NCBI GenBank assembly: GCA_053919585.1
Contig: CM132786.1
From: Euprymna scolopes
Lineage: Eukaryota
Length of the DNA: 64,000 nt
Reading direction: 5' to 3' (one strand)
The notes beneath the pieces were generated by a model. That model was not told where the DNA came from and searched no databases. It saw nothing but the letters and a program-made list of their open reading frames with translations. Positions 15,798 to 58,684 of the stretch are shown piece after piece. Position 1 is the first letter of the stretch. Each line of letters starts with the position of its first letter. Position numbers and translations under genes: made by a program.

Positions 15798-15869
15798 GCC
15801 GTGATCGTCTAGAGGTTAGGACCCCACGTTGTGGCCGTGCTAACCTAGGTTCGAATCCTGGTAACAGCA
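15798..15869 (+). tRNA. tRNA-His: tRNA-His (GTG), probably a pseudogene
   Basis: GCCGTGATCGTCTAGAGGTTAGGACCCCACGTTGTGGCCGTGCTAACCTAGGTTCGAATCCTGGTAACAGCA. GTG anticodon, GTTCGAATC B-box and downstream TTTT. Two acceptor-stem mismatches and one anticodon-stem mismatch. Confidence 0.85.
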
Positions 15870-40562: not shown

Positions 40563-43500
40563 GTGAAATAAATAGTTTGTTTTCAAGCAAATTTAAGAGA
40601 GAATTTAAAAAATCAGGAAAACCATGATTATTTTCTTATTAAATCTTATATGACAACACAATTTTAGATTTTATGCGAATTTCGCAACTTTTCTTTTTAT
40701 AAGGAACGCACAAACCTCGCAGCCATCTGTTTATTTTATTTTTCTAAAAATAATTGGAAAACATCTGTTTTTCTTTCGATCCTTTTAAAATTTTAATATG
40801 ATTTTACACTTTAATCTTTTGCCCATTATCTTTTATAAATGAGTCACTACTAATCAAGCCTGGATGCCACTCGAGGATAAGAGTTAATGCGTGCACGGCA
40901 GTCAATGCGACAATATTGTAGTAATCGTTAGTAGTAGAAATTTGGTAAATTGGATCACTTAGGGGGACGGCTAATCAACGTGGGATAACGACCATATAGT
41001 AGCCAGCTAGAAAAGGAAATTGAAGACGGTTCCACATGTGTGTAGTTCAAAGAAAGTAGCTTTGGACATGGAATCTACGCTTATGTTAAGGTTGAGATAA
41101 AGAGTGGAGAATTTATTGATAGTGGATTTGGCTGGACGAGTGTTTTTCGTGAAAGTTTGGGAATGGAGACTATTGATTAGCAGCTTCTCTCATGATGCAG
41201 TAACAGTACTCAATCCTCTGACGTATTTGGTTTTTATACTGGTGGAAAATTGCATCGTCGGTGAGATATCTGATGTAGAATGATTAAACCATTTTCCAGC
41301 ATTCTTGGCTACAGATTTGATGTACGTGTTACATTTCAGATCAAGAGTAAATGTAAGAGCATGAAGTTTATCAAATAATAAAGCCTCCATAAGACGACAG
41401 CCACTCATTTCAATTGATGCCAGAAGGGAGTCAGAGCGTTTTTATGGAAAGATAAAAGCTTCGTTTTAGATGCATCAAAATGAACTAACAACCCATTTTC
41501 CCATTACACCACGTGCTCAAAGTCAGACGAGAGTAAATCAAAGAAATCTTTGTCATTTATGGAGTTTGATCTGTTGCCAAAGATGATAGTGTAATCCGCG
41601 TAAATGTCTACGAATGGTCTTTGCGTGTGATTCGCAAATCTTTGATGTAGATTAGTAAGAGATTCGGGGTCATTATTATCACCTGAAGGAGTTTAGAATA
41701 AATACTGTAAGTGTTCGGTTTCTGTCCATCAACTACTACACTTATAGAACTTACTAAAGAGAGCATACATTTCCAACTACACCGTAGCTCGAGAGCTTGT
41801 GAAGTAGAGATTTATGTCAAACCATATTTTAATATGTCAAGAGCAAGCGCCCTAAAAACGAAGCATGAGATTAAAGAGATTCGCTAATCTTAATGAGATA
41901 TTACTGTTACCACATCTGCTATAAATATAGCAGAACGGAAACCATAATGCATATCACGTAGGAGGGTATTTTTGCTGCATGGCTGATTACTTCTCTTTTC
42001 GTACAGATTCCAGCAACTTAGTAAAGACGCACAGGAAGTTAATTGATCTGTATAGAAAGAGAGATGACCGATCATCTGAATTTTTAAATACACGGAATGC
42101 CGATGAGTTTTCCAGTGTGTTGGAAAGCAATTCTTTTAAAAAAACGCTTAAACAGCTTTTTTAAGTATTGGAGCTAGTTCTGTTTGAAGCTTTTTCAGTA
42201 CTATAATTTGCATGTCAGTATGCCTGTTGCTTTACTGGAATCAATGTTTTCTTTTTTTAGACTGGAAAAATCACACACAGATATTTGTATTTCGCAAAGC
42301 GTGTTTTCAGAAACAGGAGAAAAAACTGGGGTTGTCGGTTTTGATCGCATAGGGTAGAATTAGCTGCGAAGTTTTTGGCTTTGTCCGATGCTAACGAGAT
42401 CACCCCATGTCCATTGATGATGGTTTGGAAAGAGCACACGCTTCTGTTCAAAACTTGTGGGAAACAAACCCCTGCTCAACTATTTCAAACTTGACAGACT
42501 GAGCATATAACTCTCTCGCAGTCTTTATTTCTCTTCTATAGTGATTTCTGGCAGTCCTGAAAGCGGTTTTAGTCTCAGTAAATCTATTTCGTTGAAAGCA
42601 ATGAAACAAAGTGGTTTCTGTGCGCAGTGGCAGTAGAACATTCTAGAGAGTACCACGGCTGATTGTTAGGTCTTTTGCTGGAACATTTGAAGTGAATGAA
42701 GCGGTTAATACCTACAGCTAAACACTCCGTCATGTCTGATAGTATAGATGATACGTTCTTTTTAACATGGATAGCAGATGTATATCAGATATAAATGTAC
42801 CGAAGTTATTTACTCAGTCATGGAGTACGATGAAAAGGTACGTCTGAAAACAGAGTGCATTTTGTTTGTACCTTGTCTAAGACAACCGAGTGGTCGGAGG
42901 ATTCTCGTGAAGACATAAAGGGAGATGAACATAGTCCAGTGCAAGATGCACGAAAATGGTCTATGAGACTTGCATACCAACAGTCTGTGTTTGGCACATA
43001 GGTGGTTTCGAAAACAATCTGAGTTAGGTCAAAAGCAATGGAGAAATTGGGGAAGAACTTCCCTTTATTATCTATCTTGTTTACATAGTGAACATTTATG
43101 TCTTCAACACAGAGAGAGAATGCTAATTATTTTCGCTGATATGCTCTTAAAAACAGAAGCTCCACTGTTTTGAAGGCGATAGAGGGCAAATGCACTTCTG
43201 TGAGCAAGTGCAACCAGGAATCTCATATATGGCAGGTTAGGGTCTTCTCCGGATATTTCTTTACAACATGGAAAGACATCGCTAATGTAGGCACATATTC
43301 TCTGTCAATTGCTATCTTGGGGTTGGATTTTTATGGTACGTTGAGTATCCTTTTATCACGAACTCATCTAGATAAATAGTAGGTCCAATGCCAGTTCCGC
43401 ATGAAAACAAAACGTCTGGTTTGGTCTCCTATAATTGGGTTTCAATCTCTGGAAGGTTGAAATGTAGACTCCTGATGTTGGAAAAGAAAACTTAGAAGTG

Positions 43501-43621
43501 GGGTCTAAAGTGGAAAATAGAGTCCTTGTATTTTTTCTTTCAACTTTTCAGGCAGAAAAATAAAAGCGAAGAAATTATTTTGTATAATAATGATAAGATA
43601 AACCCATAACAATTACCCATT

Positions 43622-45731
43622 TCTAATAGAAAACAAATCTGGACTGCATTTTGTCAGCATTCGAACATTATCAGCTCTGGCCCGTTCAGTCCAGTTCTCC
43701 ATAACTCAACTCAACTTAACTCCCGACGTCTTCACTGACGGACTTATATTCCCTCATTCCAGTGTCTAACTTCATTCATATGCAAATCAGGACGCGATCA
43801 ACCCTAATCATTTGTCGCCTTTTTGTGTCATATCATCAGGTTTCGAGTTCTGAGCGTCGCACATGCCACCCGTGGCAGCCTGCCTCCGTAACTGTAGTCA
43901 CACTCCTCCCTGATCTCATGCTCACAAATAGGACAAGGATGTAGTATCTGTTTTTGTCGGGAACTCCTTAGCAGAAGTGGGGCTTATTCAGAAACATTTG
44001 CTTCCACTTCTGCCTCGTGCAATGCATTTGATTTAGCCTTATCTTCATCGTATCCTAACCTCTCGAACCGCAACTGTTCTACGATACATCGTCAGACCCA
44101 ACTGGCTCACGATAAACCGCCAGTCGCAACTGGCCCACGATACACCACCAGACACAACTGGCCCACGATACTCGGCTGGACACAGAGAATTTAATTTTTA
44201 AATTTCTCATTAAAAAAAAAACGACTTTTTACATACAAGTCGACTGAATCTCATTGTAAGTTTCTTTAATAGCGATGACATTTTCTTAAAAAAAAAACAA
44301 CCAAATCCGACTAGAATTGTACTTTCATTAACATAACTCTTTCGTTTAAAAACGACAACATTTTTCTTTTCAACACAGGATTTTTACAGGTTTTTACATA
44401 TGTACATGGTCAGTTCACCGAAACATTAAAGTCTCACAAAATCTTATTCTTCGTTCTCTCGTTGGCGGCAAGATAGAAGAAAGGGGTCTCCGGGAGCGTG
44501 TGTCTTTCTCAAGATTTAGCTTCAATCTTTCTCTTCCGTCCCGTGTATGCGCTCTTATACAAAGGTCACGAGGTGGGTCTATCGATCTGCTAAACTAATC
44601 AAGGCTAGCCACGTCAAACGGGGAATACCCGACTTCTTTGCGTGTGTGTATTTCAGCAATCCGTCCGCAGTTTCGTAAATTTAGGACCAAAATGTGAAAT
44701 TGTTTTCACATGACCCCAAGGGGTCAAATCCTGTAAATATTCTCTACTCAGAGACCCATAACGTATGAGCGTCCCTCAGGCCAACAAGTCTCGTTTCTAC
44801 ATTAATCCGACATTTCCTGTCATGTTTTAAACAAAAATTATCTGTCTTTTTTACAAAGCACAATGAACTTGTCTCTTTTAATAGGTCACCTGTCGCTATC
44901 CGGGATTCAATTAATGTTTACCGGACAATCTCAGCATATTTACCCGGTCTTACTCAGAGTTTTAGGAGATCTTAAGCTCCCAATGAGGAACAGTATCACT
45001 CCTTGAGACGGTTACGTCATACATACAAGTCGTCCGAATCACATTTAAAGTTATGTATACAGTGACGACTTTTATCAGAAAATATAACCGAATTTCATTC
45101 AAAATTCCTCATTTAAAAACGACTTTTTAATACATACAAGTAGACCGAACTTCATGTTAAGTTCTTTTAAAAGCGACGACTTTTTTCTCCAAAACAAAAA
45201 AAAATCCGACTCGAATTGTACTTTTATCGAAATAATTCTTTCGTCTAAAACCCTAACCTTTTTTTCTTTTATGCACAACAGGATTTCATTTTTAATTCTG
45301 TATTGAAAAACGACTCATTTACCTCTCCCTTTGACAACGCTTTCAACTTTCAACGCGGTTTTTAATTTTCCAGGTTCGACGCGAATCATTTAAAATTTCC
45401 CACTTTTATTTCGGCCGCATCGGATTTATATTTAAAGCCGAAATAGCTTCTAATATAAAAAAAATCTGGACTGGATTCTTGGCAGCTTTCGAACATTCTC
45501 AGCTCTGACCCGTTCAGTCCAATTCTCCATGACTCAAGTTAACTCAATTCCAAACATCTTGCCTGTCGGCCTTATATTCCCTCATTCCAGTGTCTAGCCT
45601 TATTTATATGCAAATCAAGACGCGATAGAACCTTATCATGTGTCGCCTTTTCGTGTCCTATTGGTCAGGTTTCGAGTTCTGAGCGTCGCACATGCTTCCC
45701 TTGGCAGCCTGCCTCCGTGGCTGCAGTCACA
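43622..45731 (-). mobile_element. Non-autonomous LTR retrotransposon (2.1 kb, no recognisable coding region)
   Basis: Diverged direct repeats 43622-43902 and 45449-45731. 5-bp TSD CCATT/CCACT; the empty site ACAATTACCCACTAGT is seen at about 23781. PPT AGGGAGGAG (43903-43911) and PBS AGCTATTTCGGC (45437-45448). Internal 28-bp repeats at about 44068-44180. Confidence 0.85.
45437..45448 (-). promoter_or_regulatory. Primer-binding site complementary to tRNA-Phe nt 1-12
   Basis: The plus strand GCCGAAATAGCT abuts the 5' LTR and is identical to 58141-58152. Confidence 0.8.
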
Positions 45732-47282
45732 CCACTAACATGACATTGAGAAGCCCTTCCCTCAGAATCTACTCTATGGTCGATTTCACCAAATGGCAAA
45801 AAAAAAAACAGCCCCAGTATTTTGGACCCTCTGATAGGATGACCTACTTACTGGTTAATCCAAATTGCGGGTTCCTGACTATAAAGCGAATAAGGCAGCT
45901 CAGCACCCCTATGAGTGATATGGTTATAAGAATAGAAATAGAAAATTTCCGACATCTCATGCAACTGCCTTTTCCGCTGCACTGTCGACATAGAATGCAG
46001 CTTTTTCTTCTACCTTATTCAGAAAAATCACTTCTGCTACATGTGACCTGATTGATAACTTAGGAGAATGAAATTTACTGGAGTTGCCAATAACGCATGC
46101 ACAATAAGTTGTCTCCTTTCAATTAATAATAATAATAAGAAGAAGAAGACGAAGAAGAAGAAGAAGAGGAATAAGACGAAGAAGAAGAAGAAGTATTTTT
46201 ATTGAAAACCTATATTTTGAATGCTAAGTAATACGAATTATTCCCAAATATTATGTCATTACATATGTAAATAATAATAATTTTGAAAAGAATTTCAGAC
46301 GGTAAAAATAATATTGTACCAGCCATTATACGTCCGCTGTATTGGCATCCGGATGAAACACGTTTCACGCACAGACCTAGTGACAACGTAGTCCCCAACT
46401 CCACCTACTCATTTGCTAGTATGTATGATCTTTTTTCTCCATCTTGTATGTGACAGGATAAACATGACAACTAGAAGCAATATGTACTTTATGTGTCTGG
46501 GTTTCTTGTTTTGTATGTTATAAGTACTGATAATCGATAATCGAAAGAATACGATTAAAGAAAGAACATTCCAATTTAACCAAAGTTAAAAGACCTAATT
46601 CATTCTAACATCACAAGTGAGTGTATTCTTTGTCGGACTATTAATAGGCAAAGAAATTGCTTATCTATATCTCTACATTACTTTAAAAGTAAATTGTAGA
46701 AGCTTTATCACTGCACAAGAAGCAACGCACTGCCAATAAAATCATCAATAAATTCGTTGATAAAACAGGAATTCCAGAATAAATGTTTCTGCCTAGAAGC
46801 CAAACTATTATATTTAATTTTAGCATTTTAAACTTAAAGTCATGCCATTATACTTAAATTTATATTGCAATTTCCCTGTTATTCTAATAACAGCCAAACT
46901 GCTATCCAGATTCAACGCTCTCAAAATATTGTAGATCAATAGTTATTTTCATTTGGGAATACTATTTTATCTAATGGCGTTATTCTTGTTATTAGTTGAA
47001 ATTAATGTAACATATGACGTTTCAGAAATGTTATTTTTTCTCATTATAATTTAAATAACAATGAAATAATTAGTTTAAGTTGTTATAAGTCAGTTGGAGA
47101 TACTTTGTATCATGCTTTCAGCTAACTGTCAAGGCAGAAAAAAATACAAAAGCAAAATTGGTTATTATTACGATTACCTTCTATTTTTATTGGGGGTGGG
47201 GGTTATATATTTTCCTATTATACAGGGTAAAATGATAAATTTGTCGATCTAAAGAAAACAAGACTGAAGCTTTATTTTCTAG

Positions 47283-48005
47283 CAAATATTGAGCAATTCT
47301 AATCGAATAGTATTTTGAAACAAATATTGACCAAATTCTATTCGGATAGTATTTTGAAGCAAATATGGAGCAAATTCTATTCGGATAGTATTTTTAAACA
47401 AATATTCAGCAAATTATTTTCGGATAGTATTTTGAAACAAATATTGAGTACATTCTAATCGGATAGTATTTTTAAACAAATATTGAGCAAATTCTATTCG
47501 AATAGTATTTTTAAACAAGTATTGACCAAATTCTATTCGGATAGTATTTTTAAACAAGTATTGACCAAATTCTATTCGGATAGTATTTTAAACAAATATT
47601 GAGAAAATTCTAATCGGATAGTATTTTTAAACAAAAATTTGAGCAAATTCTATTTGAATAGTATTTTTAAACAAATATTGAGCAAATTCTATTCGGATAG
47701 TATTTTGAAACAAATATTGAGCAAATTCTAATCGGATAGTATTTTAAACAAATATTGAGCACATTCTAATCAGATAGTATTTTGAAACAAATATTGACCA
47801 AATTCTATTCGAATAGTATTTTTAAACAAATATCGACCAAATTCTATTCGGATAGTATTTTGAAACAGATATTGAGCAAATTCTAATCGGATAGTATTTT
47901 AAACAAGTATTGACCAAATTCTAATCGAATAGTATTTTGAAACAAATATTGAGAAAATTCTAATCGGATAGTATTTTTAAACAAATATTGAGCAATTCTA
48001 TTCGG
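47283..48005. repeat. Tandem minisatellite of about 39 bp, about 18 copies
   Basis: Unit AAATATTGAGCAAATTCTATTCGGATAGTATTTTTAAAC with single-base variants. Confidence 0.95.
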
Positions 48006-49074
48006 TTAGTAGAGCTGACATCTATTCAATGTAGCTACCTTCAACCTAAATTAACGTCTCGATAAGTGTCTAGAACTGCGAGCATGTTATTTCCATCACG
48101 ATACCGATATTTATTACATTTTACTAAGTGTGACCTCCCGATACGCCGAGTAATATAGCCAAAAGAAGATTAAATATTGAAAACTATGAATAAGCTTATT
48201 TAGTAGATGTTTGGTATATAGAAATTTTCGAAAAAAAATTTCCAGGCCATTTTAGTTATTCTCCGCCGTTAGTTTTTTACCTGTCATATAAATTTCAACG
48301 AAATAGGATTTATTTCAAGTTTAAATAGATTTCCTTAAGCGTAGCTGACTAAGGCATTTAAGACACTTAGAGATTTGGGACCCCTTTTATTATCCGTCAC
48401 ACAATATTTTATACATAGCGTTTAAATATTATTACAATATAAGATGCTTGCAATTGATAAAAAAGAATTATGCTTTCTTAATCACTTCTATAACCATGCA
48501 CTTTTAGATTTTATGTAAATAATCTAACCTTACTTTCTATATGGGACACATAAATACCGTCACGTCTATTGCGTTATATATATATATATATATATACAGA
48601 AGTATTCTACATATAAAGTAAACACATTCGTCTTTATTTCGAGTGTTCTAACATTTAATACTTTTAATGGGTCTTCCTTTAAATTTAAGTCCTATTTTCC
48701 AAAGCTCATACATTGAATGTTGCATAAAACTTCTTTTCTGTCGATTCATACGCAAATAATAGTATTTTCAGTAATAATTGAAAAGAACTTTATGCGGCTG
48801 TAATGATATTATAACCGCGATCTGACGTTTAATGTATTAAATATCACTAACAACACTAGTGTATACACTTTCTTTGAAGCTTCATCTAGCGTGACCAGAT
48901 AATCAAGCAAATATTTGGCACTTTTAGATACATTCAGTGTAATGTGGACTATAGCATATTGTGAACTAAGTCATTGCTGGGTGGCATGTGAAGCTTTATC
49001 CCGGTGCATCGCGATGGGTTCGCAACTAGGGCAGGCAATTACTCAATTTTATTGAAAAGTTAGCGATTTTATTT

Positions 49075-52000
49075 TTTTTTTTTACATAGAAATCACCACT
49101 TCTCAAGTCCAAGATGCCACTCGAGGATAAGGGTTAAGGAGTGTACTGTAGAAATTGGACAATATCGTAATCGTATGTAATGGAAATTCAGTAAATTTGA
49201 TGGGACGGCTCATAAAAAACTTGTTTACCTTAAACTTGAAGACAAACATATTGTAGTAAGCTGGAAAACAGGAAAACGGAAGAATTCCATAGGCGTGTAG
49301 TTCTAAACTATAAGCTTTGTTCATGGAATCTACGTTAAGGTTTAGGAACAGATAAATAGTGGGGAAAATTAGTGATAATGTTTCTGCTAGACAGGTGTAT
49401 CTTGTGAAAGTTTGGCGATGGGGACCATAGATGTGAGCTCAGCCAAGCACTTGCCATGAAAATAACGATAAAGCAGAGACAAACTCGCAACATCTCTTCT
49501 GTGAGAAAAAGTTTTCAGGGAAGAGAAAAGGCATCCCCTACGAGGCTAGGAAGTTTATTTTGAAATCTATCAACGCAGGATACGTCCTTTCTAGCAGCTT
49601 CTGCCCAAATGTGGCAACAGTACTCCATCCTTGGACGTACCTGGCTCTTATATAGATAGAGAATTGCATCGACAGTGAGATATCTACTGGATCGATAGAA
49701 GGATTCCACCATGTTTCCAGTGGACTTGGCAACGGATTTAATGTATGTGTTCCATTTAAGATCAGGAGTAAAGGTCAAGCCCAGAAGCTTTTTAAAACAT
49801 GAGGCCTCCCCAAGAAGAGAGCCATTCATTTCAATTAAAGCCAGATAGGGGTCAGAGCGTTAATGATGTAAAGATAAAAGCTTAGTAATAGATGCATTAA
49901 AAGTAACAAGCCACCTCTTTCCCCAGTGTACAACTTGCTCGAGATCAGAGGAGAGAGAATCAGAGAGAACTTGATCGTGTACGGTCTTAGAAAGTAGTCT
50001 CATCAGCATAAATGTCTACAAAGGATGAAAAGATGTGATTTGGAAGATCATTAATGTAGATCAGGAAGAGAGTTGGGCCCAGGAAAGACTCCTGAGGTAC
50101 TCCAGCATTAATACTATGGGCTTCAGATTTCTACCCATCAACCACTACTCTTATGAACCTATCAGAGAGAAATGATTTAATAATTGAGAAAACGTTTCCA
50201 GCTATACCGTAGCTGGAGATCTTGTGAAGTAAACCGTTATGCTATACTCTATCAAAGGCTTTTGATATGTCAAGAGCAATTGCCCTAGAAAGGTAACCTC
50301 CGTCGAGAGATTCGCTAATCCTATAAGATATAACTGTAAGCACATCTGCTATAGATCTAGCAGAACGGAAACCATATTGCGTGTCACTAAGAACATTATT
50401 TTTGCTAAGATGGTTGATTACTTCTCTATTAAACACAGATTCCAGCAACTTACTCATGACGCACAGAAGACTTATTGGCCTTTACTGAGAGGGAGATGAG
50501 CGATCAGCTGAATTCTTAAATACAGGGCATACTGATGAGATTTTCCAGGGTGATGGGAAGCAAATCTCCTTAAGACAACGTTTAAACAGTTTGGTAAGTA
50601 TGGCCGCAAGTTCTGGTTGAAGTCTTTTGAATATTATAATTGGAATACCGTCAGGGTCGGTTGCTTTACTGGAATCAAAGTTTTTGAATAGCTTGGCAAC
50701 ATCACGTACAGATATGTGTATATCACATAGCGTGTTTTCTGATATAGGAGGAAATATTGGAGGTTGGCGACTTTGGTCGCAAAGGGTAGAATTAGCTGTA
50801 AAGTTCTTGGAAAAGAGCTGGCTTTGTCCGATGCTTACCTCAGGTCCATTTATGATAGTTGGGATAGAGCACACGCTTCTGTTCAGGATCCTGTTTGATA
50901 TTTGCCAAAACTGATGGGAACCAAGCCGCTGCTCAGCTACTTTGGACTTGACGGATTGAGCATACAACTCTCTTGCGTTCTTTATTACTTTTTACAGTGA
51001 AAGCAATGGAAAAAGTGATTTCTGTGTGCAATGGCAGCAGCACCTTCTGGAGCGAGCCACGACTGGCTGTTAGGTTTTTGCTGGAATTTTTTCGAGGGTA
51101 TGAAACGGTCTATACCTACAATTAACCATTCTGGAAAGTATGATACTGTAGAGTATACATCCTTTATAAACATGGAACCCAGAACTAGATCTGATATAAA
51201 TGTACGGAAGCTATCCCAGTCAGCCATATAGTATCGATATACTGTACGATTGATAGCTACATCTGAGGACTTATTACATTTCATTTTTATCTTAACTGAT
51301 TCAACAGAGTGGTCGGAAGCTCCAAGTGGAGACAGAACTGAAGCTGAACACAGTTCAGGGCAAGTTGTGAGGAAAAGGTTTAGGAAACTTGCATACTGGC
51401 CGTCAGTATCGGGTACACGGGTGGGTTCGTGAACAACCTGAGTGAGGTCATAAGCAATGGGGAAATCATGACAGAACCTCCCCTCATCACCCGTCTTGTT
51501 TGAGTAGGTTAACCAATCTCACATTGTGAACATTAAAGTCTCCACATATATAAATATTAGCTCAAGGATAAGCAGATAGGACGTGGTCAATTTTCTCAGA
51601 TATGCTTTTAAAGATAGTAACTCAGCTGTTGTGCGGTCGATAGAGAGCAAATATAAATGCAGTAGTTTGAGCAAGTCCCGCAAGCACATATAAGGTAAGT
51701 TAGGATTTTCGCTGGAGATGTCCCTATCACATAGAAAGCCATCTTTTATATAGGCACATATTACATGCCCATGGCGATCTTGGAGGTCAGATTTGGAAGT
51801 AAAATTAAAGTATCCTTTAATTACGAACTCATCAAAGGAAATAGCCTGTCCAATGCCAGTTTCGCTTAGAAATAATATGTCTGGTTTAGTCTCCTGTAAT
51901 TGGATTTCAATCTCTAGAAGGTTAGAACGTAGACCTCTAATGTCCGAGAAGGAGACATTGTAGTGTGGGGTCTACGTTAGAAGTCGGAGATACGGGTTTA

Positions 52001-52545: not shown

Positions 52546-54496
52546 TCGTCTCTTCTCCATTATAAAAACGTATTGTACTTAATAAAAGTCAATTTGGCGT
52601 GTTTAAGCGAAGGTATGGTGAAAGATTCCCATCTCACTAACTGAAAATGAATATAATTGGCTTATCTGTTTAGGCTATCGACTTGGAACATATAGACAAC
52701 ATTTATGGATAAAACAAATATATTATAAAAAAAATAAAACAATATATATCCAAAATGAACTTGCCAGAGAGAATCGGCACATTTTCAACGAGAAAACTAT
52801 TTACAAAATTATTAAAACAATGAAATAAAGATAAAGTTTTAAAAAACTGAAATAAATATAGTATTAGAATTTGCATCTAGAACAGAAATATTATAAATTA
52901 ATAACTTAACTGCTATAAACGTCCTTCGTGACTGCAAATATACATCATGTTAAATGGCTGGTTCACTCAAAAAGAACGGTTGCAGAAGGGAGATTTTGGA
53001 ATTATGTTTTCTAGGTTTCTTCTGACCTTACTTATAATGTTAAGGGACTTACTAGGGTTCGAGATGCTGATTGACAATAGGCAAATCTTTTAGACTTTTT
53101 TCTAATAACATGCCCTGAATTGTGCTCATTCTCAGTTCTGTTCTGCTAGGATCTTCTGATCACTCGATTATTACAATACAAATACAAACAAAGTATTACT
53201 AAACCACAAATACCTTTCTCTTTCGAACAGTATACTGATACTCGATATTATACTGGTTCGGTTTCAGAACGTCCTATCGAAGCTATCCTTTATTACAAAC
53301 GAATGCGTTTTATATCTATCTTAACTGATTGGATGCATATAGGCCTAGACAGCTATATACTCTCCATAAATTCTAACAGAAACCAACCACTTTCCTTTGG
53401 TAGACTCCTGAATGTGCTGCCTCCATTGCACACAGAAGCCACTACTTCAATTGCTTTAAACGTAATAACAGTTTTAAAACTAAGGTCGCCTATAGAACTG
53501 CTAGCAATCACTCCAAAAGTATTATAGAAAACGCGAGATTATCGTATGCTCATTTTTTTTAATTAGAAGAACAGAAGCTGTGTTTCCATAAGTTTTGGCG
53601 AATAACAAATAAGGTCCTAAATAAATTGAAGTACTCGATCCCGACCATTATCACCGGGCGTGAAGTAATTTCCTAAACATCTGACAGAATAAAACTCTTT
53701 GCCAATAACTTTGCAGCAAACACAACTCCATGTGATCAGGGTTTCACTACCACACTAGTTTCCTCCCAAGAATGAAAATAATCTGAGTGGTATACACATA
53801 TTTGTTCGTGATATTGCTACAGTCACCAATAACATGACAATATTTCACTATTCAATCTGCAATTGAAAGAAGTATTCATTCTTGGAAACATGTTTATCGA
53901 TGCCTGAAAAAGAAATGTTTCACAAATCTTTGGAAAACCTCATTCGTTTTCCCAATATTGAAAAATAGTGAGGATCTGTTCTGTATCTCAGTGATCGTCT
54001 GAGTGTCATGAGTAAGCTGCTTGAATCCGTGTTAAATAGAGAAATTGTAACCACCGCAGCCAAAAGAGCCTACTCAGTCACAAACAATATAGTTTCCATT
54101 CGGAAGGATCGTTTGTCGTTTGCGTGACACTGCTGTCCGAACTTTCACTTTCTGGTCACCACTTGACGCGTCTTCTCTCCACTCCAAAACGAACTTCTGC
54201 AACTTTAGCTTTTCTCTCCCCGAATCCGACTTTTCTCTTCTACAAATACAACTTCTCTGCTCGCAATCTAACTTCAGAATGCCTTCCTTCCCCAAATCAC
54301 TCCTCTTTTATCTCCAATCAGGAGCATCTCATTTGCATACTTCATGGTCACCCTGTAGGCATATAAAGAAACAGGGCAGCCATTTTTGTTTCTTTCTTCT
54401 TCATTATGAACACGAGGTAAGCCACACAAAAACGCGGTCGGTCGTTCTTGTTTCTTTTTTCTTCATTTACACAACACGCCCCCCTGATGTTCGAGA

Positions 54497-57404
54497 TCAA
54501 TAGGATACTTCGTAATCCTCCATCCAAGCAGGCCGCCTCCTCTCACGTCGAGGCCTCTGGGGGACAACTTCTCGGGGGTTTACGTTTTCAGGATCACTAC
54601 AACGCGGGCCTAAGTCAGGTCGAGCAGCATCATTTGCTTCTCGGTGGCCCTCGATTTCCTCTTCTTCACTGCCCTCACTGCATACCGGCAATGTCACGCG
54701 ACGCAGGTCTAAGATATGCCGGGGAACGCCATTCACCATCACATTGTTCTTCGACTGCAATCCTGTTACGACCCCTCTTTTCCAACGAGTGGTACACTGT
54801 GCATTGGGGGGTTTCACCCACACCTCTTCACCTACTTTGATAGTGGCTTCTTCACTCTCAATTCCTGCTGTTTTGTTGCACGGATGCCGCCACTTATATG
54901 TGAAAACGGCCCTATGAGGCACAGTTGTCTCATCTTGTTTGGTCTTCAGCGAGATGTTATACCAAAACACCGCCTCTATGGGTGATACGTTGCTTTTTTC
55001 CGCAGCGGCTTTAATGGTGCGATGATTCCTCTCCACTATTCCGTTGCCACTCGGCCGATACGCTGCTCTGAAAAATTGCCTTACTCCCCACTTATCACAC
55101 ACCCCTTTAAAGGCTTCTGATCGGAAAGCGGGGCCATTGTCCATTAAGAGTTCCTCAACCGGCCCTCTCTCCAAAAATATCTCCTCGATGACCCCTCCGA
55201 TCGCCCATGCAGCTTCTGCCCTGATCTCTCTCCAGATGGCAAACCTTCCCGGTCCACAGTCGACCATCGACAGATACAATTTGTGGCGATAGTGTGTCAC
55301 ATCAATGGCCAATCGCTTCCAGTCCTACGCAACGTGTAGCTCTCCTGCTTCGTGTCTGGACGGTCCAGGGTCAATTGATTGGCACTCTCGACAGTTCTCC
55401 ACCACCTCTCTAACCTCCTCCTCGGTGGTCTCCGGGTAAACCTCTCTGGCTAGGAATAACGTTCGTTCTCGACCAAAGTGGTGCATTTCGTGTGACTCTT
55501 TGACTTCTTCCCCTGCACAGCATACCGAGGAGACCTCCTTTCCCTCCTGCAGCCAGGCCTTCTTCACGCGTGTCATCGAATCCGCCTTGTTTTTTTTCTG
55601 ACGGGACCAACACAACAGATACTCTCAACTGGAATTCCGCTATCAGGTCGGTGAGCGCTCCGAGTCTGCGCTTGATCAGCATTTCCGCAGCACCCCTGGT
55701 CTTAACTCTCTTATCGCCAGTTACTGCCGACCGAATCCACGACGCTACCGTTGCCGAATCGGTTTTGACTTCAATTATTTTCAATCCCCATTTCAGGGCC
55801 AGATTGATTCCTTTTATAGCGGCATCTAGTTCTGCTACGTTGATATGGGAGAAGTCGTTGTTTTTTCTTAGCCACGCCGCATCCTCCACAGTTACACCTC
55901 CTATCTCTAGTACGACGCCCAACGCCAGGTTACTGGCATCGCACCAAACCACACCCGCGTCTTCGCCGCTGACATACCATTTCCCTTTCACTGGGTCCTC
56001 ATTCCTCACTCTCGCAATGACTTCTTGCAGCATGTTCATGACGTCCTTCGTCACACGGCCCTTCCAGCCATCAGTGCCTGTTTGTCGTTTAATGAAGCTG
56101 CATGCTATCCTGAGCCAGCCAGCGATAGGATAGTGCCCGACCAGCCTCCCTCAGACTGAGAAGAGTTCTCGCCTCTTCACCTCAGATCCGACTTCGGGTA
56201 TTGCATTCCCTCGTTCGAAGACAAGGCTTTCTTTTCCATCTCGCCTTAGTTTCAACCCCAGCACCGCTCCTCCATCTAGGGCCTCCGCCGGTTTTGCAGT
56301 TAACCCATACTTCTCGACATGGCTTCTTACTTTCTCTCCTGTCACCTCCGCCTCCTCCACCAGGATGTCGTCAATGTATGAACTAGTGGCCTCCTCCACT
56401 GTACAGTCTTTGCTCAGCACTGTTTTCAGCACGGCAGTCATAATTTTGGGGGCTGAACTTAGCCCAAAGCCTAACCTCGTCAGACAATACACGCGCCCCT
56501 TGTACCGGACCAGTTTGTACTGCCAGAGTTTTTCATCTACATGGATCTGCAGATATGCCGATTTCAGATCGACAATCTTAGTGGCCCGCCCCATTCTTCT
56601 CCATTTCCTCATGACCTCCTCACATACGTCGATCCCCGTTCCAGTGTGGCAGGCTACGTGTCTGTTCAATTCCCTAAAATCCAGCACGGGCCTAATCTTG
56701 TTTTTGGTAGGCTGAACAACCGCCAGTAGTGCCAGCACTCCTTTTTCTTCCCCTGTCTACGGTTTCAGAATTCCTTCTTTTATCCACCTCTCCACTTCTT
56801 CCTCGAATCCTTTTCTTATTTCTCCTCGCATGGTGTTTTCGTAGCAGCCCACCTTATTCTGTAGTTCTGGGGGCCCGGAGATCCATTTCCATTCCACCGT
56901 CCACCTCACGCCATCAAACTTCGCCAGGAAATCGTTGTCCTCAATGCAGCAAACCTCCGGTTTTGGGGTTCTGACGGTTCTATCACCTTCCACTCCTGCC
57001 ATCCCCACTGCGCCGAGACGTCCAAACGTCACTTGGCCCCCTCTTAACGTAGCGCCCCCCAGTCGGTTAATTGCACTCATACCTATAATCACGTCGACAC
57101 CACCGACCAGATGATTCAACACTAGGGCTTGCAGTCCAATGGGCACCCCTTGCACCATTACTTCCGCTGTCGTCTCTCCTAAGCATTTCACATCCCTGCC
57201 ATCCACGGTCCTAATAATCCTGGTTCCGCTCCATGACCTCGCGACATTCCTCGCTAACAACGTTGTAGTGCAGCCTGTGTCGACAAGGGCTATGGCTCTC
57301 TTCCAATTGACTACTACCGGTAACCGAGGCAATGTTCCATCATGCGCCATTTCCACACAAAAGGGGTAACCACTGGCGTAATAGCTCCCCTTCACTCGTT
57401 TCCC
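54497..57404 (-). pseudogene. pol: Gypsy Pol (protease, RT, RNase H, integrase) with three in-frame stops and one frameshift
   Basis: ALVDTGC (PR); RPVLDFRELN, DLKSAYLQI, LGFGLSSAP, YIDD (RT); WCDAS, NVAELDA, KTDS (RH); HEMHH..CREC, AIDVTH, LMDNG, GIVER (IN). Stops at 56757, 56151 and 55325; frameshift in the A-run near 55590. Confidence 0.93.
57345..57404 (-). promoter_or_regulatory. -1 programmed ribosomal frameshift signal (G GGA AAC plus putative pseudoknot)
   Basis: Slippery heptamer at 57404-57398 in the gag frame just before the gag stop, with pol in the -1 frame. Downstream stem AAGGGG/CCCCUU has loop CGCCA complementary to a later UGGCG. Confidence 0.75.
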
Positions 57405-58123
57405 TGGTCCCGTGCAGCAACACAATAGCGGCTAATATGCCCCACTTGTCCACATCGGTAGCACGTGATCCCTGGTCTCGGCTCTTTGCAGTCCTTGATC
57501 AGATGAGGACCCTGGCACCGGAAACACTTGATAGCAGGTCTCCCCTCCTGTCGCCTCGCCGGCTGCCTCTCATTCAAGTGAGGCCTCATGCACATATTTC
57601 CACTCATAGCTGCAGCCACGATTGGGCTTTTAACATTTTTCACTAGGACTCTGGCGTGGACCAAGAGATCGTCCACTTCCATAGAATGGATCCCCGTGAT
57701 TCTCTGCATGTTCGCAGAGACGTCCTCTGGGAAGCCATTCACTAGGTACAGCTTTACCGTCATCTCCAGGCTCCTCCCCACGTAACCAGCCAACCCTGCC
57801 AGTCTCCTGATCTCTGCCGCAAAGACGTCAACGGACTCGCCGGTCCACCTCAAACTTGACAGCTTTCCAAGTGCTTGAAATGGGCCCTCAGCGAAGGCCA
57901 ATTTCAGCCTTTGCTCCACTAAGGCAAGGTCTTCCTTGTCTTCATCTCGCATATGCTGGTAAATCGTGAGGGCTTCCCCCTCTAAGTATAGCGGCAGCAG
58001 GGTGACCACATCTTCTATCTTTTGCAGCTTCGCCACCATTTTTAATTTCTCCAGCCACTTAATCAGGTCACCCTCCCCAGTAAAGGGTCTCAACATCTGA
58101 GTGCTCAGTCTCCACTCAGCCAT
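57392..58123 (-). CDS. gag: Gypsy Gag, 243 aa, with two zinc knuckles
   Basis: Intact ORF 29 nt after the 5' LTR; CFRCQGPHLIKDC and CYRCGQVGHISRYC. Confidence 0.92.
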   Translation of the reverse strand: MAEWRLSTQMLRPFTGEGDLIKWLEKLKMVAKLQKIEDVVTLLPLYLEGEALTIYQHMRDEDKEDLALVEQRLKLAFAEGPFQALGKLSSLRWTGESVDVFAAEIRRLAGLAGYVGRSLEMTVKLYLVNGFPEDVSANMQRITGIHSMEVDDLLVHARVLVKNVKSPIVAAAMSGNMCMRPHLNERQPARRQEGRPAIKCFRCQGPHLIKDCKEPRPGITCYRCGQVGHISRYCVAARDQGNE

Positions 58124-58140
58124 GTTAATTTGCTTGATGT

Positions 58141-58152
58141 GCCGAAATAGCT
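58141..58152 (-). promoter_or_regulatory. Non-canonical primer-binding site complementary to tRNA-Phe nt 1-12
   Basis: AGCTATTTCGGC immediately follows the 5' LTR, with no TGG-type PBS. Its reverse complement GCCGAAATAGCT is the 5' end of metazoan tRNA-Phe(GAA). Confidence 0.85.
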
Positions 58153-58684
58153 TGTCGTTTGCGTGATACTGCTGTCCGAACTTTCACTTTCTGGTCACCA
58201 CTTGACGCGTCTTCTCTCCACTCCAAAACGAACTTCTGCAACTTTAGCTTTTCTCTCCCCGAATCCGACTTTTCTCTTCTACAAATACAACTTCTCTGCT
58301 CGCAATCTAACTTCAGAATGCCTTCCTTCCCCAAATCACTCCTCTTTTATCTCCAATCAGGAGAATCTCATTTGCATACCTCATGGTCACCCTGTAGGCA
58401 TATAAAGAAACAGGGCAGCCATTTTTGTTTCTTTCTTCTTCATTATGAACACGAGGTAAGCCACACAAAAACGCGGTCGGTCGTTCTTGTTTATTTTTTC
58501 TTCATTTACACCACATCGTTCACAGATGAACTGATGTTAATTACACATAAGATCGGTTAATCTATTAACGCAATACCTCTCTTAAGAGCAATAGCTCTTG
58601 ACATATTGAAGGCATTTGGTATAAAGCTTTGAAATAGAAGTCTGCTTCATAAAATTTTCAGCTATGGTATTTCCAGAATATTTT

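What the first reader, a model, noticed from the sequence alone, without database searches (positions are those of the whole stretch)
58141..58152. Gypsy element whose PBS pairs with the 5' END of tRNA-Phe: candidate priming by a 12-nt 5' tRNA fragment
Seen: the 5' LTR (..AACGACA) is followed with no spacer by AGCTATTTCGGC, and the gag ATG comes only 29 nt after the LTR. There is no TGG-type PBS and no convincing self-primer complement in the LTR. Established: metazoan tRNA-Phe(GAA) begins GCCGAAAUAGCUCAG, so nt 1-12 pair 12/12 with U12 at the LTR edge, the geometry needed to start minus-strand synthesis. Known exceptions to 3'-CCA priming are internal tRNAi-Met fragments (copia, Ty5) and the 11-nt RNase H-cut self-primer of Tf1. 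Seen: the same 12-mer occupies the same position in a second LTR element in this window (45437-45448) whose LTRs I cannot align to this one, which argues against chance. Inference: this lineage uses a 5' tRNA-Phe fragment ending at U12, either a host 5'-tRF or a cut made by the element's own RNase H. Plus-strand strong stop would then arise by run-off at tRNA nt 1. I am not aware of this priming mode being described, but I could not search the literature.
Basis: partly seen in the sequence, partly recalled or inferred. Interest (0 to 1): 0.92.

Follow-up and report, generated by a model that had tools for sequence, protein, structure and literature searches.

The report
Retroelement primer site matching tRNA-Phe's 5' end
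A young, abundant jumping gene in a mollusc genome, and its relatives in other invertebrates, carry a start site for DNA copying that pairs with the first 12 bases of tRNA-Phe rather than a tRNA's 3' end. I could not find this way of starting reverse transcription described.

Summary
On the minus strand, a 4.4-kb Ty3/Gypsy-like LTR element (54114-58515, 5-bp target duplication AACGA) has AGCTATTTCGGC directly after its 5' LTR. Host tRNA-Phe(GAA) genes begin GCCGAAATAGCT. There is no TGG-type site and no self-primer.

The same 12-mer abuts the unrelated LTR of a non-coding element at 43622-45731. With a preceding A it occurs 7,965 times in the genome (control 29).

Nine relatives from a cephalopod, a crab, a mantis shrimp and unnamed hosts (Pol identity down to 31%, LTRs unalignable where tested) all show AGCTAT-NNN-GGC at the LTR edge. 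They vary only opposite tRNA nt 4-6. An arthropod-type tRNA-Phe gene with exactly the crustacean variant exists, but its host is unknown.

Two sister elements (36-37% Pol identity) carry an ordinary PBS. One is a perfect 18-nt match to the 3' end of tRNA-Phe.

Best reading (about 0.7): this lineage switched from the 3' to the 5' end of tRNA-Phe. The primer would end at U12, probably after a cut at the duplex end, as in Tf1. That step is inferred, not shown.

I found no description in the searchable literature. Two earlier notes of this scan reached the same reading on other DNA of this genome.

The parts
58153..58515 (-). 5' LTR of element 1 (363 nt, TGTGG...CGACA)
   Evidence: LTR pair alignment, flanking duplication, and the same boundaries in other copies.
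58141..58152 (-). Primer-binding site AGCTATTTCGGC, complementary 12/12 to nt 1-12 of host tRNA-Phe(GAA)
   Evidence: The 12-mer is invariant in 30 copies, while the next base varies.
57392..58123 (-). gag ORF (243 aa) with a CCHC zinc knuckle
54497..57425 (-). pol, broken in this copy into four open frames: protease 56757-57425, RT 56151-56738, RNase H 55410-56054, integrase 54497-55312
   Evidence: Domain order was confirmed on longer natural frames of other copies.
54477..54489 (-). Polypurine tract CATCAGGGGGGCG directly before the 3' LTR
   Evidence: The motif GATCAGGGGG is shared with relatives.
54114..54476 (-). 3' LTR of element 1
58516..58520 (-). Target-site duplication AACGA (5' side); its partner is at 54109-54113
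45449..45731 (-). 5' LTR of element 2 (TGTGAC...TATTAGA), not alignable to element 1's LTR
45437..45448 (-). The same 12-mer primer-binding site in element 2, directly after its 5' LTR
43903..45436 (-). Non-coding internal region of element 2, ending in the PPT-like GAGATCAGGGAGGAG (43903-43917)
   Evidence: No sense ORF of 60 aa or more; sequence; PPT motif hit.
43622..43902 (-). 3' LTR of element 2 (84% identical to its 5' LTR); flanks AGTGG / AATGG form a likely 5-bp duplication with one mismatch

Best explanation
Element 1 is a recently inserted copy of a compact (4.4 kb) Ty3/Gypsy-like LTR retrotransposon. Its primer-binding site is the 12 nt that directly follow the 5' LTR. That site pairs with nt 1-12 of cytoplasmic tRNA-Phe(GAA): the 5' strand of the acceptor stem, U8, A9 and the first three bases of the D stem. 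It does not pair with a tRNA 3' end.

Proposed mechanism:
1. tRNA-Phe is taken into the particle, as in the sister elements that use its 3' end.
2. Its 5' strand is unwound and annealed to the PBS.
3. The tRNA is cut between U12 and C13, at the end of the 12-bp duplex. The cut is most likely made by the element's own RNase H, as Tf1 does with its self-primer. The alternative is use of a pre-made host fragment.
4. The 3'-OH of U12 is extended into U5.
5. Plus-strand strong-stop synthesis later copies the 12 RNA bases and runs off at tRNA nt 1, which regenerates a 12-nt PBS.

Shown: the exact geometry, its conservation, host specificity, and the link to tRNA-Phe. Inferred: that priming happens this way, and who makes the cut.
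For: Geometry. The LTR edge is fixed by 5-bp target duplications in the window copy and in other copies. In the standard replication scheme the first DNA base is laid opposite the last U5 base, so the primer's 3' end must pair with PBS base 1. That base faces U12.

The tRNA. Host tRNA-Phe genes start GCCGAAATAGCT. The predicted duplex energy is -18.7 kcal/mol, against about 14.7 kcal/mol to open the acceptor and D stems.

Boundary. In 30 copies the 12-mer never varies. The base just 3' of it is G57/A36/T4/C3 in 100 copies. This fits a site rewritten from a 12-nt primer in each cycle, with untemplated addition at run-off.

A shared trans-acting primer. A plus the 12-mer occurs 7,965 times in the genome (control 29). 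When family 1 and tRNA genes are excluded there are still 5,734 hits (control 78), with many different following bases. Element 2 has an unrelated LTR but the same PBS and PPT motif.

Relatives. Argonauta hians has LTR|AGCTATTTCGGC. Petrolisthes and Oratosquilla have LTR|AGCTATCTAGGC. Six further elements from unnamed hosts carry AGCTAT-NNN-GGC at the LTR edge: three more with CTA, and one each with CCC, CCG and CGC. Pol identity to the window family falls to 31%.

Host specificity. The three non-host variants tested (CTA, CCC, CCG) are at chance level in this genome: 23, 12 and 6 hits against controls of 52, 18 and 4.

Co-variation. A eukaryotic, arthropod-type tRNA-Phe(GAA) gene starting GCCTAGATAGCT, with a compensated acceptor stem, exists on metagenome contig L068.

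Sister elements. Two elements with the same DUF7047-bearing Pol (36-37% identity) have an ordinary PBS. L190 carries TGGTGCCGAAACCCGGGA, which is 18/18 to the 3' end of tRNA-Phe plus CCA. L188 carries a 13/14 version. In a Pol tree the two group together (97/98), apart from the nine compact elements.

Expression. RNA reads run from U5 through the PBS into the leader.

No self-primer was found.
Against: There is no biochemical evidence: no strong-stop cDNA end, no 12-nt tRNA-Phe fragment, and no demonstrated cleavage.

I could not read the tRNA-Phe genes of the crab, the mantis shrimp, Argonauta or the unnamed hosts. Co-variation therefore rests on this genome plus one tRNA gene of unknown host.

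One variant (AGCTATCCGGGC, L187) equals, from my memory of the sequence only, the 5' end of vertebrate and insect tRNA-Lys(UUU). The primer may not be tRNA-Phe in every host.

The start of transcription could not be mapped. A primer encoded elsewhere is excluded only by the lack of complementarity.

No second conserved contact with tRNA-Phe was found. Nothing therefore tells intact tRNA from a fragment.

The branch of L189 in the tree is long and its place is unsure.
Confidence: 0.7

Rival explanations
1. The 12-mer is a real primer-binding site, but the primer is a pre-existing small host RNA that ends ...GCCGAAAUAGCU-3'. This could be a very short 5' tRNA-Phe fragment made by a host nuclease, or a transcript of tRNA-Phe-derived repeats. 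The element itself would cut nothing.
For: The geometry and conservation are the same as for the main reading. The genome holds hundreds of tRNA-Phe-like 5' ends, including long tandem arrays with a 219-bp period. No second contact with the body of the tRNA is conserved.
Against: I know of no described 12-nt tRNA fragment class. From general knowledge, known 5' fragments end in the D loop or later. Sister elements use intact tRNA-Phe through its 3' end, which suggests that the whole tRNA is what the particle recruits. Tf1 sets a precedent for an 11-nt primer cut in place.
Confidence: 0.2
2. Tf1-like self-priming: a stretch of the element's own RNA folds back onto the 12-mer and is cut to give the primer.
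For: The short (12 nt) PBS abuts U5 and there is no TGG. Both are also features of Tf1/sushi elements.
Against: No complement exists in the LTR or anywhere in the element. The best match is 8/12 Watson-Crick in the LTR, 10/12 with G-U (equal to the shuffled median), and 9/12 in the whole element. Eight elements with mutually unalignable LTRs share one of a few 12-mers, which calls for a shared trans-acting primer.
Confidence: 0.02
3. The 12-mer is a conserved cis element with another role, such as packaging, dimerisation or tRNA mimicry (it repeats the tRNA's own 3' acceptor strand UUUCGGC). Priming would happen elsewhere or by another route.
For: PBS bases 6-12 plus the frequent A at +13 are identical to tRNA-Phe nt 66-73. 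Element 2 has a downstream GCCGAAAT that could hairpin with the 12-mer.
Against: No other candidate PBS lies between the LTR and gag. The block always starts at the first base after the LTR, in every compact relative examined. Conservation stops sharply at 12 nt. The place is exactly where sister elements carry an ordinary tRNA-Phe PBS.
Confidence: 0.06

Closest known systems
Tf1/Tf2 (and other Tf1/sushi-group) self-primed reverse transcription
   Same: A short primer duplex (11 nt in Tf1, 12 nt here) lies directly against U5. The primer is the 5'-terminal stretch of an RNA. In Tf1 its 3'-OH is made by an RNase H-dependent cut at the end of the duplex, and plus-strand strong stop runs off at the RNA's 5' end. 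The Tf1 facts are from established literature (Levin 1995; Lin and Levin 1997), recalled and not re-read here.
   Different: Here the paired RNA is a host tRNA acting in trans, not the element's own 5' end, and no self-complement exists. The Pol is not of the Tf1/chromovirus type: the RNase H region matches RVT_3/PF00075, and I saw no chromodomain hit.
copia, Ty5 and Candida Tca2/pCal priming by cleaved tRNA fragments
   Same: The primer is a 5' part of a host tRNA whose 3' end is created by cleavage, not the CCA end.
   Different: Those elements pair with the anticodon stem-loop region of tRNAi-Met or tRNA-Arg, and the fragment is about 39 nt (recalled literature). Here the pairing is with nt 1-12 of tRNA-Phe, so the primer would be only 12 nt and the cut would lie in the D stem.
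Conventional tRNA 3'-end priming, as in sister elements L190 and L188 of the same Pol lineage
   Same: The same tRNA (Phe), the same position next to the 5' LTR, and the same Pol architecture with DUF7047.
   Different: The sisters have an 18-nt TGG-type PBS after a 3-5 nt spacer, and larger elements with fused gag-pol of about 1,400 aa. The window lineage has a 12-nt PBS with no spacer, complementary to the other end of the tRNA. In the window's genome the 3'-type site occurs 4 times against 7,965 for the 5'-type.

Membership tests
Ty3/Gypsy-like LTR retrotransposon (Metaviridae in the broad sense) | Two LTRs ending TG..CA, flanked by a short target-site duplication | tested here: met
   363-nt LTRs running TGT..ACA with duplication AACGA. 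Other copies carry their own 5-bp duplications.
Ty3/Gypsy-like LTR retrotransposon (Metaviridae in the broad sense) | gag with a zinc knuckle; pol in the order protease, RT, RNase H, integrase | tested here: met
   Pfam hits in that order in the window copy and on longer natural frames of other copies.
Ty3/Gypsy-like LTR retrotransposon (Metaviridae in the broad sense) | RT/RNase H of the Ty3/Gypsy sequence type | tested here: inconclusive
   RVT_1 is only weak. The RNase H region matches RVT_3 (above its cut-off) and PF00075 (below its cut-off), not the Gypsy RNase H families. A strong DUF7047 lies between RT and RNase H. The nearest solved structures are retroviral integrases and RTs at weak E-values. 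I built no reference phylogeny.
Ty3/Gypsy-like LTR retrotransposon (Metaviridae in the broad sense) | Polypurine tract directly before the 3' LTR | tested here: met
   CATCAGGGGGGCG lies before the 3' LTR.
tRNA 3'-end-primed retroelements (retroviruses and most LTR retrotransposons) | PBS complementary to the 3' end of a tRNA, including CCA (starts TGG) | tested here: not met
   No TGG lies between the LTR and gag. No match to the tRNA-Phe 3'-end PBS occurs in the window at up to 3 mismatches. The only 8-nt-or-longer complementarity to tRNA-Phe near the LTR is to nt 1-12.
Tf1/sushi-type self-priming elements | PBS complementary to the first bases of the element's own transcript | tested here: not met
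   The best LTR complement equals the shuffled expectation. No second copy of the complement occurs in the window at up to 1 mismatch.
Tf1/sushi-type self-priming elements | Primer 3' end made by an RNase H-dependent cut at the end of an 11-nt RNA duplex | not testable with these tools
   Needs biochemistry. Only the analogous geometry (a 12-bp duplex ending at the U5 edge) is seen.
copia/Ty5-type tRNA-fragment priming | PBS complementary to the anticodon stem-loop region of tRNAi-Met (or tRNA-Arg in Tca2) | tested here: not met
   The complementarity is to nt 1-12 of tRNA-Phe. It ends exactly at tRNA nt 1 on one side and at the LTR edge on the other.

The most novel reading that the evidence does not exclude
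A widespread invertebrate retroelement lineage (molluscs, malacostracan crustaceans and other hosts) starts reverse transcription from the 5'-terminal 12 nt of tRNA-Phe. The primer would be cut out of the intact, packaged tRNA by the element's own RNase H at the end of the PBS duplex. This would be a trans version of Tf1 self-priming. It would have arisen, within a lineage that ancestrally used the 3' end of the same tRNA, by switching to the tRNA's other end.
Probability: 0.45. Interest if true: 0.9.

Novelty: new variant of a known kind. Interest (0 to 1): 0.85.

Why it matters
Textbook accounts give three ways of priming minus-strand synthesis in LTR elements: a tRNA 3' end, an internal cut in tRNAi-Met or tRNA-Arg, and Tf1 self-priming. 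A fourth mode, using the extreme 5' end of a tRNA, would matter for several reasons.

- The priming machinery would be freer than thought. It would give a natural system in which an RT/RNase H may cut an RNA-RNA duplex in trans.
- It would explain why standard annotation, which searches only tRNA 3' ends, reports "no PBS" for many invertebrate elements. One survey found no PBS in 361 of 1,512 elements using only 3' 12-mers (PMC13524379).
- It would be a new link between tRNA fragments and transposons.
- The 12-nt signature is a simple marker for about 8,000 insertions in this 5.9-Gb genome. It ties non-autonomous elements such as element 2 to their likely helpers.

Tried and rejected
- Self-priming: rejected, because no complement exists.
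- A second conserved contact with tRNA-Phe elsewhere in the RNA: only chance-level 8-9-mers, none shared between elements.
- Mapping the transcript start and poly(A) site with public RNA reads: depth was low and even over the LTR and both strands were read. In one single-cell run, read ends pile up at LTR nt 175-187. That spot resembles the 3' end of the template-switch oligo over about 11 nt, so I treat it as a library artefact.
- Finding which organisms hold the variant tRNA-Phe of L068: run names are coded and only 4 words were sampled, so this was uninformative.
- Searching the crab genome directly: it is not in the collection.
- Viral-contig scan for relatives: nothing found.
- Literature: seven searches and three papers read. 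Nothing describes a PBS for a tRNA 5' end. The supplement of PMC13524379 that lists tRNA 12-mers is not held.
- tRNA-Lys(UUU) as a control: the 5' end I recalled has no match in this genome, so it gave no control.
- The window's tRNA-His and the tRNA-Cys of L004 look like pseudo-tRNAs and were not used as controls.
The about 5,700 non-family-1 sites could therefore not be sorted into families.

Full report
**What is at the site**

The finding lies on the minus strand. Read that way, the sequence is ...CACGCAAACGACA | AGCTATTTCGGC | ACATCAAGCAAATTAAC ATG.

Two 363-nt direct repeats, 58153-58515 and 54114-54476, differ at 5 positions. Both begin TGT and end ACA. The five bases AACGA flank both ends.

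Between the repeats lie five open frames:
- a gag frame with a CCHC knuckle;
- four pol frames carrying protease, RT, RNase H and integrase matches.

A polypurine run, CATCAGGGGGGCG, touches the 3' LTR. This is a 4.4-kb LTR retrotransposon copy with broken pol.

The 12-mer starts at the first base after the LTR. The gag ATG follows 29 nt after the LTR, and there is no TGG between them.

**The LTR edge is exact**

A 311-nt probe across the LTR-PBS-gag junction finds 40 scored copies at 98-100% identity, out of 1,812 first-look candidates. I fetched 20 longer stretches. Most show two LTRs with the same ends and their own 5-bp duplication, for example ACATC, ACTAT, GAGCT, TTATT and ATAAT. A 34-nt pattern across the junction has 344 matches at up to 2 mismatches. 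The family is young and abundant.

**The tRNA**

The genome (5.9 Gb) has 768 matches to GCCGAAATAGCTCAGTTGG at up to 1 mismatch. ARAGORN calls tRNA-Phe(GAA) at seven of the eight sites fetched. The gene reads GCCGAAATAGCTCAG...GGGTTTCGGCA.

The PBS is therefore complementary 12/12 to nt 1-12. U12 lies opposite the first PBS base. C13 faces the last LTR base, an A, so pairing cannot extend. The predicted duplex energy is -18.7 kcal/mol. Opening the acceptor and D stems costs about 14.7 kcal/mol in the same model.

**Sharp boundaries**

In 30 copies found with the long probe, the 12-mer never varies. Two neighbouring sites are hypervariable. In 100 copies with exact flanks:
- the base just 3' of the 12-mer is G57 / A36 / T4 / C3;
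- LTR position -6 is A42 / C28 / G20 / T10.

Variation right after the 12-mer is what one expects if plus-strand strong stop runs off at tRNA nt 1 and RT sometimes adds an untemplated base. That is my inference. The -6 hotspot is unexplained. It is usually the same in both LTRs of a copy but differs in 2 of 19.

**Not self-priming**

The sense strand of the element contains no complement of the 12-mer:
- 8/12 Watson-Crick in the LTR;
- 10/12 with G-U, which equals the median of 500 shuffled LTRs;
- 9/12 anywhere in the element.

The window has no other match at up to 1 mismatch.

**A shared, trans-acting primer**

The second site, 45437-45448, lies directly after the 5' LTR (45449-45731) of a 2.1-kb element. 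Its other LTR is 43622-43902, and the two are 84% alike. The internal part is non-coding and ends in GAGATCAGGGAGGAG before the LTR start TGTGAC. Its LTR does not align with that of element 1 better than shuffled sequence. It is a non-autonomous element with the same PBS and the same type of PPT.

Genome-wide counts:

| Pattern | Hits | Control |
|---|---|---|
| A + 12-mer | 7,965 | 29 |
| Same, excluding tRNA genes and family 1 | 5,734 | 78 |

In the second search nearly all listed hits have A at -1, and the following bases differ widely. Many families therefore use this site. That rules out a primer encoded by any one of them.

**Relatives elsewhere**

A natural 852-aa pol frame from another copy carries protease, weak RVT_1, a strong DUF7047, an RNase H region matching RVT_3/PF00075, the H2C2 zinc finger and the integrase core. 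It has hundreds of homologues at 49-79% identity. These include proteins of Argonauta hians, Petrolisthes manimaculis and Oratosquilla oratoria, plus more distant ones.

I fetched the DNA around twelve of them and located LTRs and duplications. Ten carry the 12-nt block; L183 and L184 come from one sample and share LTR end and PBS, so I count them as one element, giving nine. Every one has a 12-nt block at the first base after the LTR:

| Element | Host or source | LTR end \| PBS |
|---|---|---|
| L059 | Argonauta hians | ..ATCAAG \| AGCTATTTCGGC |
| L060 | Petrolisthes manimaculis | ..CTACA \| AGCTATCTAGGC |
| L061 | Oratosquilla oratoria | ..ATCACA \| AGCTATCTAGGC |
| L183, L184, L185, L186 | unnamed | AGCTATCTAGGC |
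| L182 | unnamed | AGCTATCCCGGC |
| L187 | unnamed | AGCTATCCGGGC |
| L189 (31% Pol identity) | unnamed | AGCTATCGCGGC |

Only PBS positions 7-9 vary. These face tRNA nt 4-6, in the middle of the acceptor stem. The eight LTRs I tested are mutually unalignable.

**Host specificity and co-variation**

In the window's genome the three non-host variants I tested are at chance level:

| Variant | Hits | Control |
|---|---|---|
| A+AGCTATCTAGGC | 23 | 52 |
| A+AGCTATCCCGGC | 12 | 18 |
| A+AGCTATCCGGGC | 6 | 4 |

A metagenome scan for GCCTAGATAGCTCA found mostly bacterial tRNAs. One hit is a eukaryotic, arthropod-type tRNA-Phe(GAA): GCCTAGATAGCTCAGTTGGGAGAGCG..., with the 3' strand TCTGGGCA (L068). 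It matches the crustacean PBS exactly. The contig carries an SLC12 exon, but its host is unknown. This is suggestive and does not prove co-variation.

**Sister elements use the other end of the same tRNA**

Two relatives with 36-37% Pol identity, the same DUF7047 and a fused gag-pol of about 1,400 aa have an ordinary PBS:
- L190 reads LTR..GCAACA acttt TGGTGCCGAAACCCGGGA. This is the perfect 18-nt complement of the 3' end of tRNA-Phe plus CCA (compare).
- L188 reads LTR..CCCACA gcg TGGTGACGAAACCCGC, which is 13/14 to the same sequence.

In a maximum-likelihood Pol tree of the twelve sequences the two group together (97/98). The nine compact 5'-type elements form another fully supported group. 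L189 sits on a long, unsure branch.

One switch of PBS type is enough to explain the tree. Its direction is not shown, because the tree has no outgroup. In the window's genome the 3'-type site occurs only 4 times. This independently ties the lineage to tRNA-Phe and makes a chance match of the 12-mer untenable.

**Expression**

Public poly(A) RNA runs labelled as mollusc hold about 70% of the sampled words of the 5' LTR-gag stretch. Reads and contigs run from U5 through the PBS into the leader. The transcript start could not be mapped.

**How it most likely works**

Shown:
- a 12-nt site at the exact place where minus-strand synthesis must begin;
- its perfect complementarity to the 5' end of an abundant host tRNA;
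- conservation in unrelated LTR contexts and across phyla;
- use of the same tRNA by sister elements.

From the standard replication scheme (established knowledge), the last U5 base is the first base copied. The primer's 3'-OH must therefore sit on U12.

Inferred: the tRNA is cut between U12 and C13. The closest precedent is Tf1, whose RNase H cuts an 11-bp RNA duplex at its end to free a primer that is likewise the 5' end of an RNA. A host-made 12-nt fragment is the alternative.

From general knowledge, the first 12 bases of eukaryotic tRNA-Phe carry only m2G10. This should not block copying, so run-off at nt 1 would define the PBS length.

**Comparison and novelty**

By domain order, LTRs, PPT and duplication the element is a Ty3/Gypsy-like retrotransposon. 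Its RNase H region is of the RVT_3/PF00075 type, and I did not place it in a named clade.

It fails the defining test of each known priming mode:
- 3'-end priming (no TGG site);
- Tf1-type self-priming (no self-complement);
- copia/Ty5-type fragment priming (no pairing with an anticodon stem).

It works most like Tf1, but with a host tRNA in trans.

Seven full-text searches and three papers gave no description of such a site. A recent metazoan survey looked only for tRNA 3' 12-mers and left 361 of 1,512 elements without a PBS (PMC13524379). Much older literature is not in the searchable library, so absence is not proof.

Two earlier notes of this scan (s1-244830, s1-241393) reached the same reading on other DNA of this genome, and a third (s1-275135) flagged element 2. 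They are not independent evidence.

**Verdict**

The mechanism of primer formation is unproven.

Noticed in passing
window 58158 (LTR position -6) and 58140 (first base after the PBS); the same sites in family copies L009-L058: These are two mutation hotspots in an otherwise 98-99% uniform family. LTR position -6 is A42/C28/G20/T10 and the base after the 12-mer is G57/A36/T4/C3 in 100 copies. Position -6 usually agrees between the two LTRs of a copy but differs in 2 of 19. The second hotspot fits untemplated addition at run-off. The first is unexplained; it is the sixth base added to a 12-nt primer.
   Followed up: partly
G000:C28:101706348-101722569 and G000:C18:100.09-105.52 Mb: tRNA-Phe(GAA) genes are hugely amplified. 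There are 768 matches to the 5' 19-mer, including a tandem array with a 219-bp period of about a hundred units and large clusters on another contig.
   Followed up: no
Pol of the family, e.g. L039:1219-3774: The RNase H region matches RVT_3 and PF00075 (cellular/retroviral type), not the Ty3/Gypsy RNase H families. A strongly matching DUF7047 (about 60 aa) sits between RT and RNase H. The nearest solved structures are retroviral integrases and RTs at weak E-values. The clade is unplaced.
   Followed up: partly
L190:3466-3488 and L188:700-720: Sister elements with fused gag-pol of about 1,400 aa carry an ordinary PBS for the 3' end of tRNA-Phe (18/18 in L190). In the window's genome that 18-mer occurs only 4 times.
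   Followed up: yes
window 47236-47989: A tandem array of about 19 units with a 39-bp period lies between the two LTR elements.
   Followed up: no
window 40645-43503 and 48485-51968: Two diverged copies (71-82% identity, offset about 8.4 kb) of another repeat of about 3 kb, with no long ORFs. One ends next to element 2.
   Followed up: no
window 15798-15869: ARAGORN calls a tRNA-His(GTG), but its 3' end does not pair with its 5' acceptor strand. It is probably a pseudo-tRNA or a tRNA-derived repeat.
   Followed up: no
L061:2095-2167: In Oratosquilla the element's 5' LTR starts 196 bp from a tRNA-Val(CAC) gene. This is a single case, so no claim of tRNA-gene targeting is made.
   Followed up: no
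window 54290-54302 (LTR nt 175-187): The LTR contains GAGTGATTTGGGG, which resembles the 3' end of a common template-switch oligo. One single-cell RNA run shows 64 reads that switch into oligo sequence exactly there. This is likely a library artefact that could be mistaken for a transcription start.
   Followed up: partly
window 45403-45413 (minus strand): Element 2 carries GGCCGAAATAA 23 nt downstream of its PBS. This sense copy of tRNA-Phe nt 1-8 could form a hairpin with the PBS. It is not seen in element 1.
   Followed up: no
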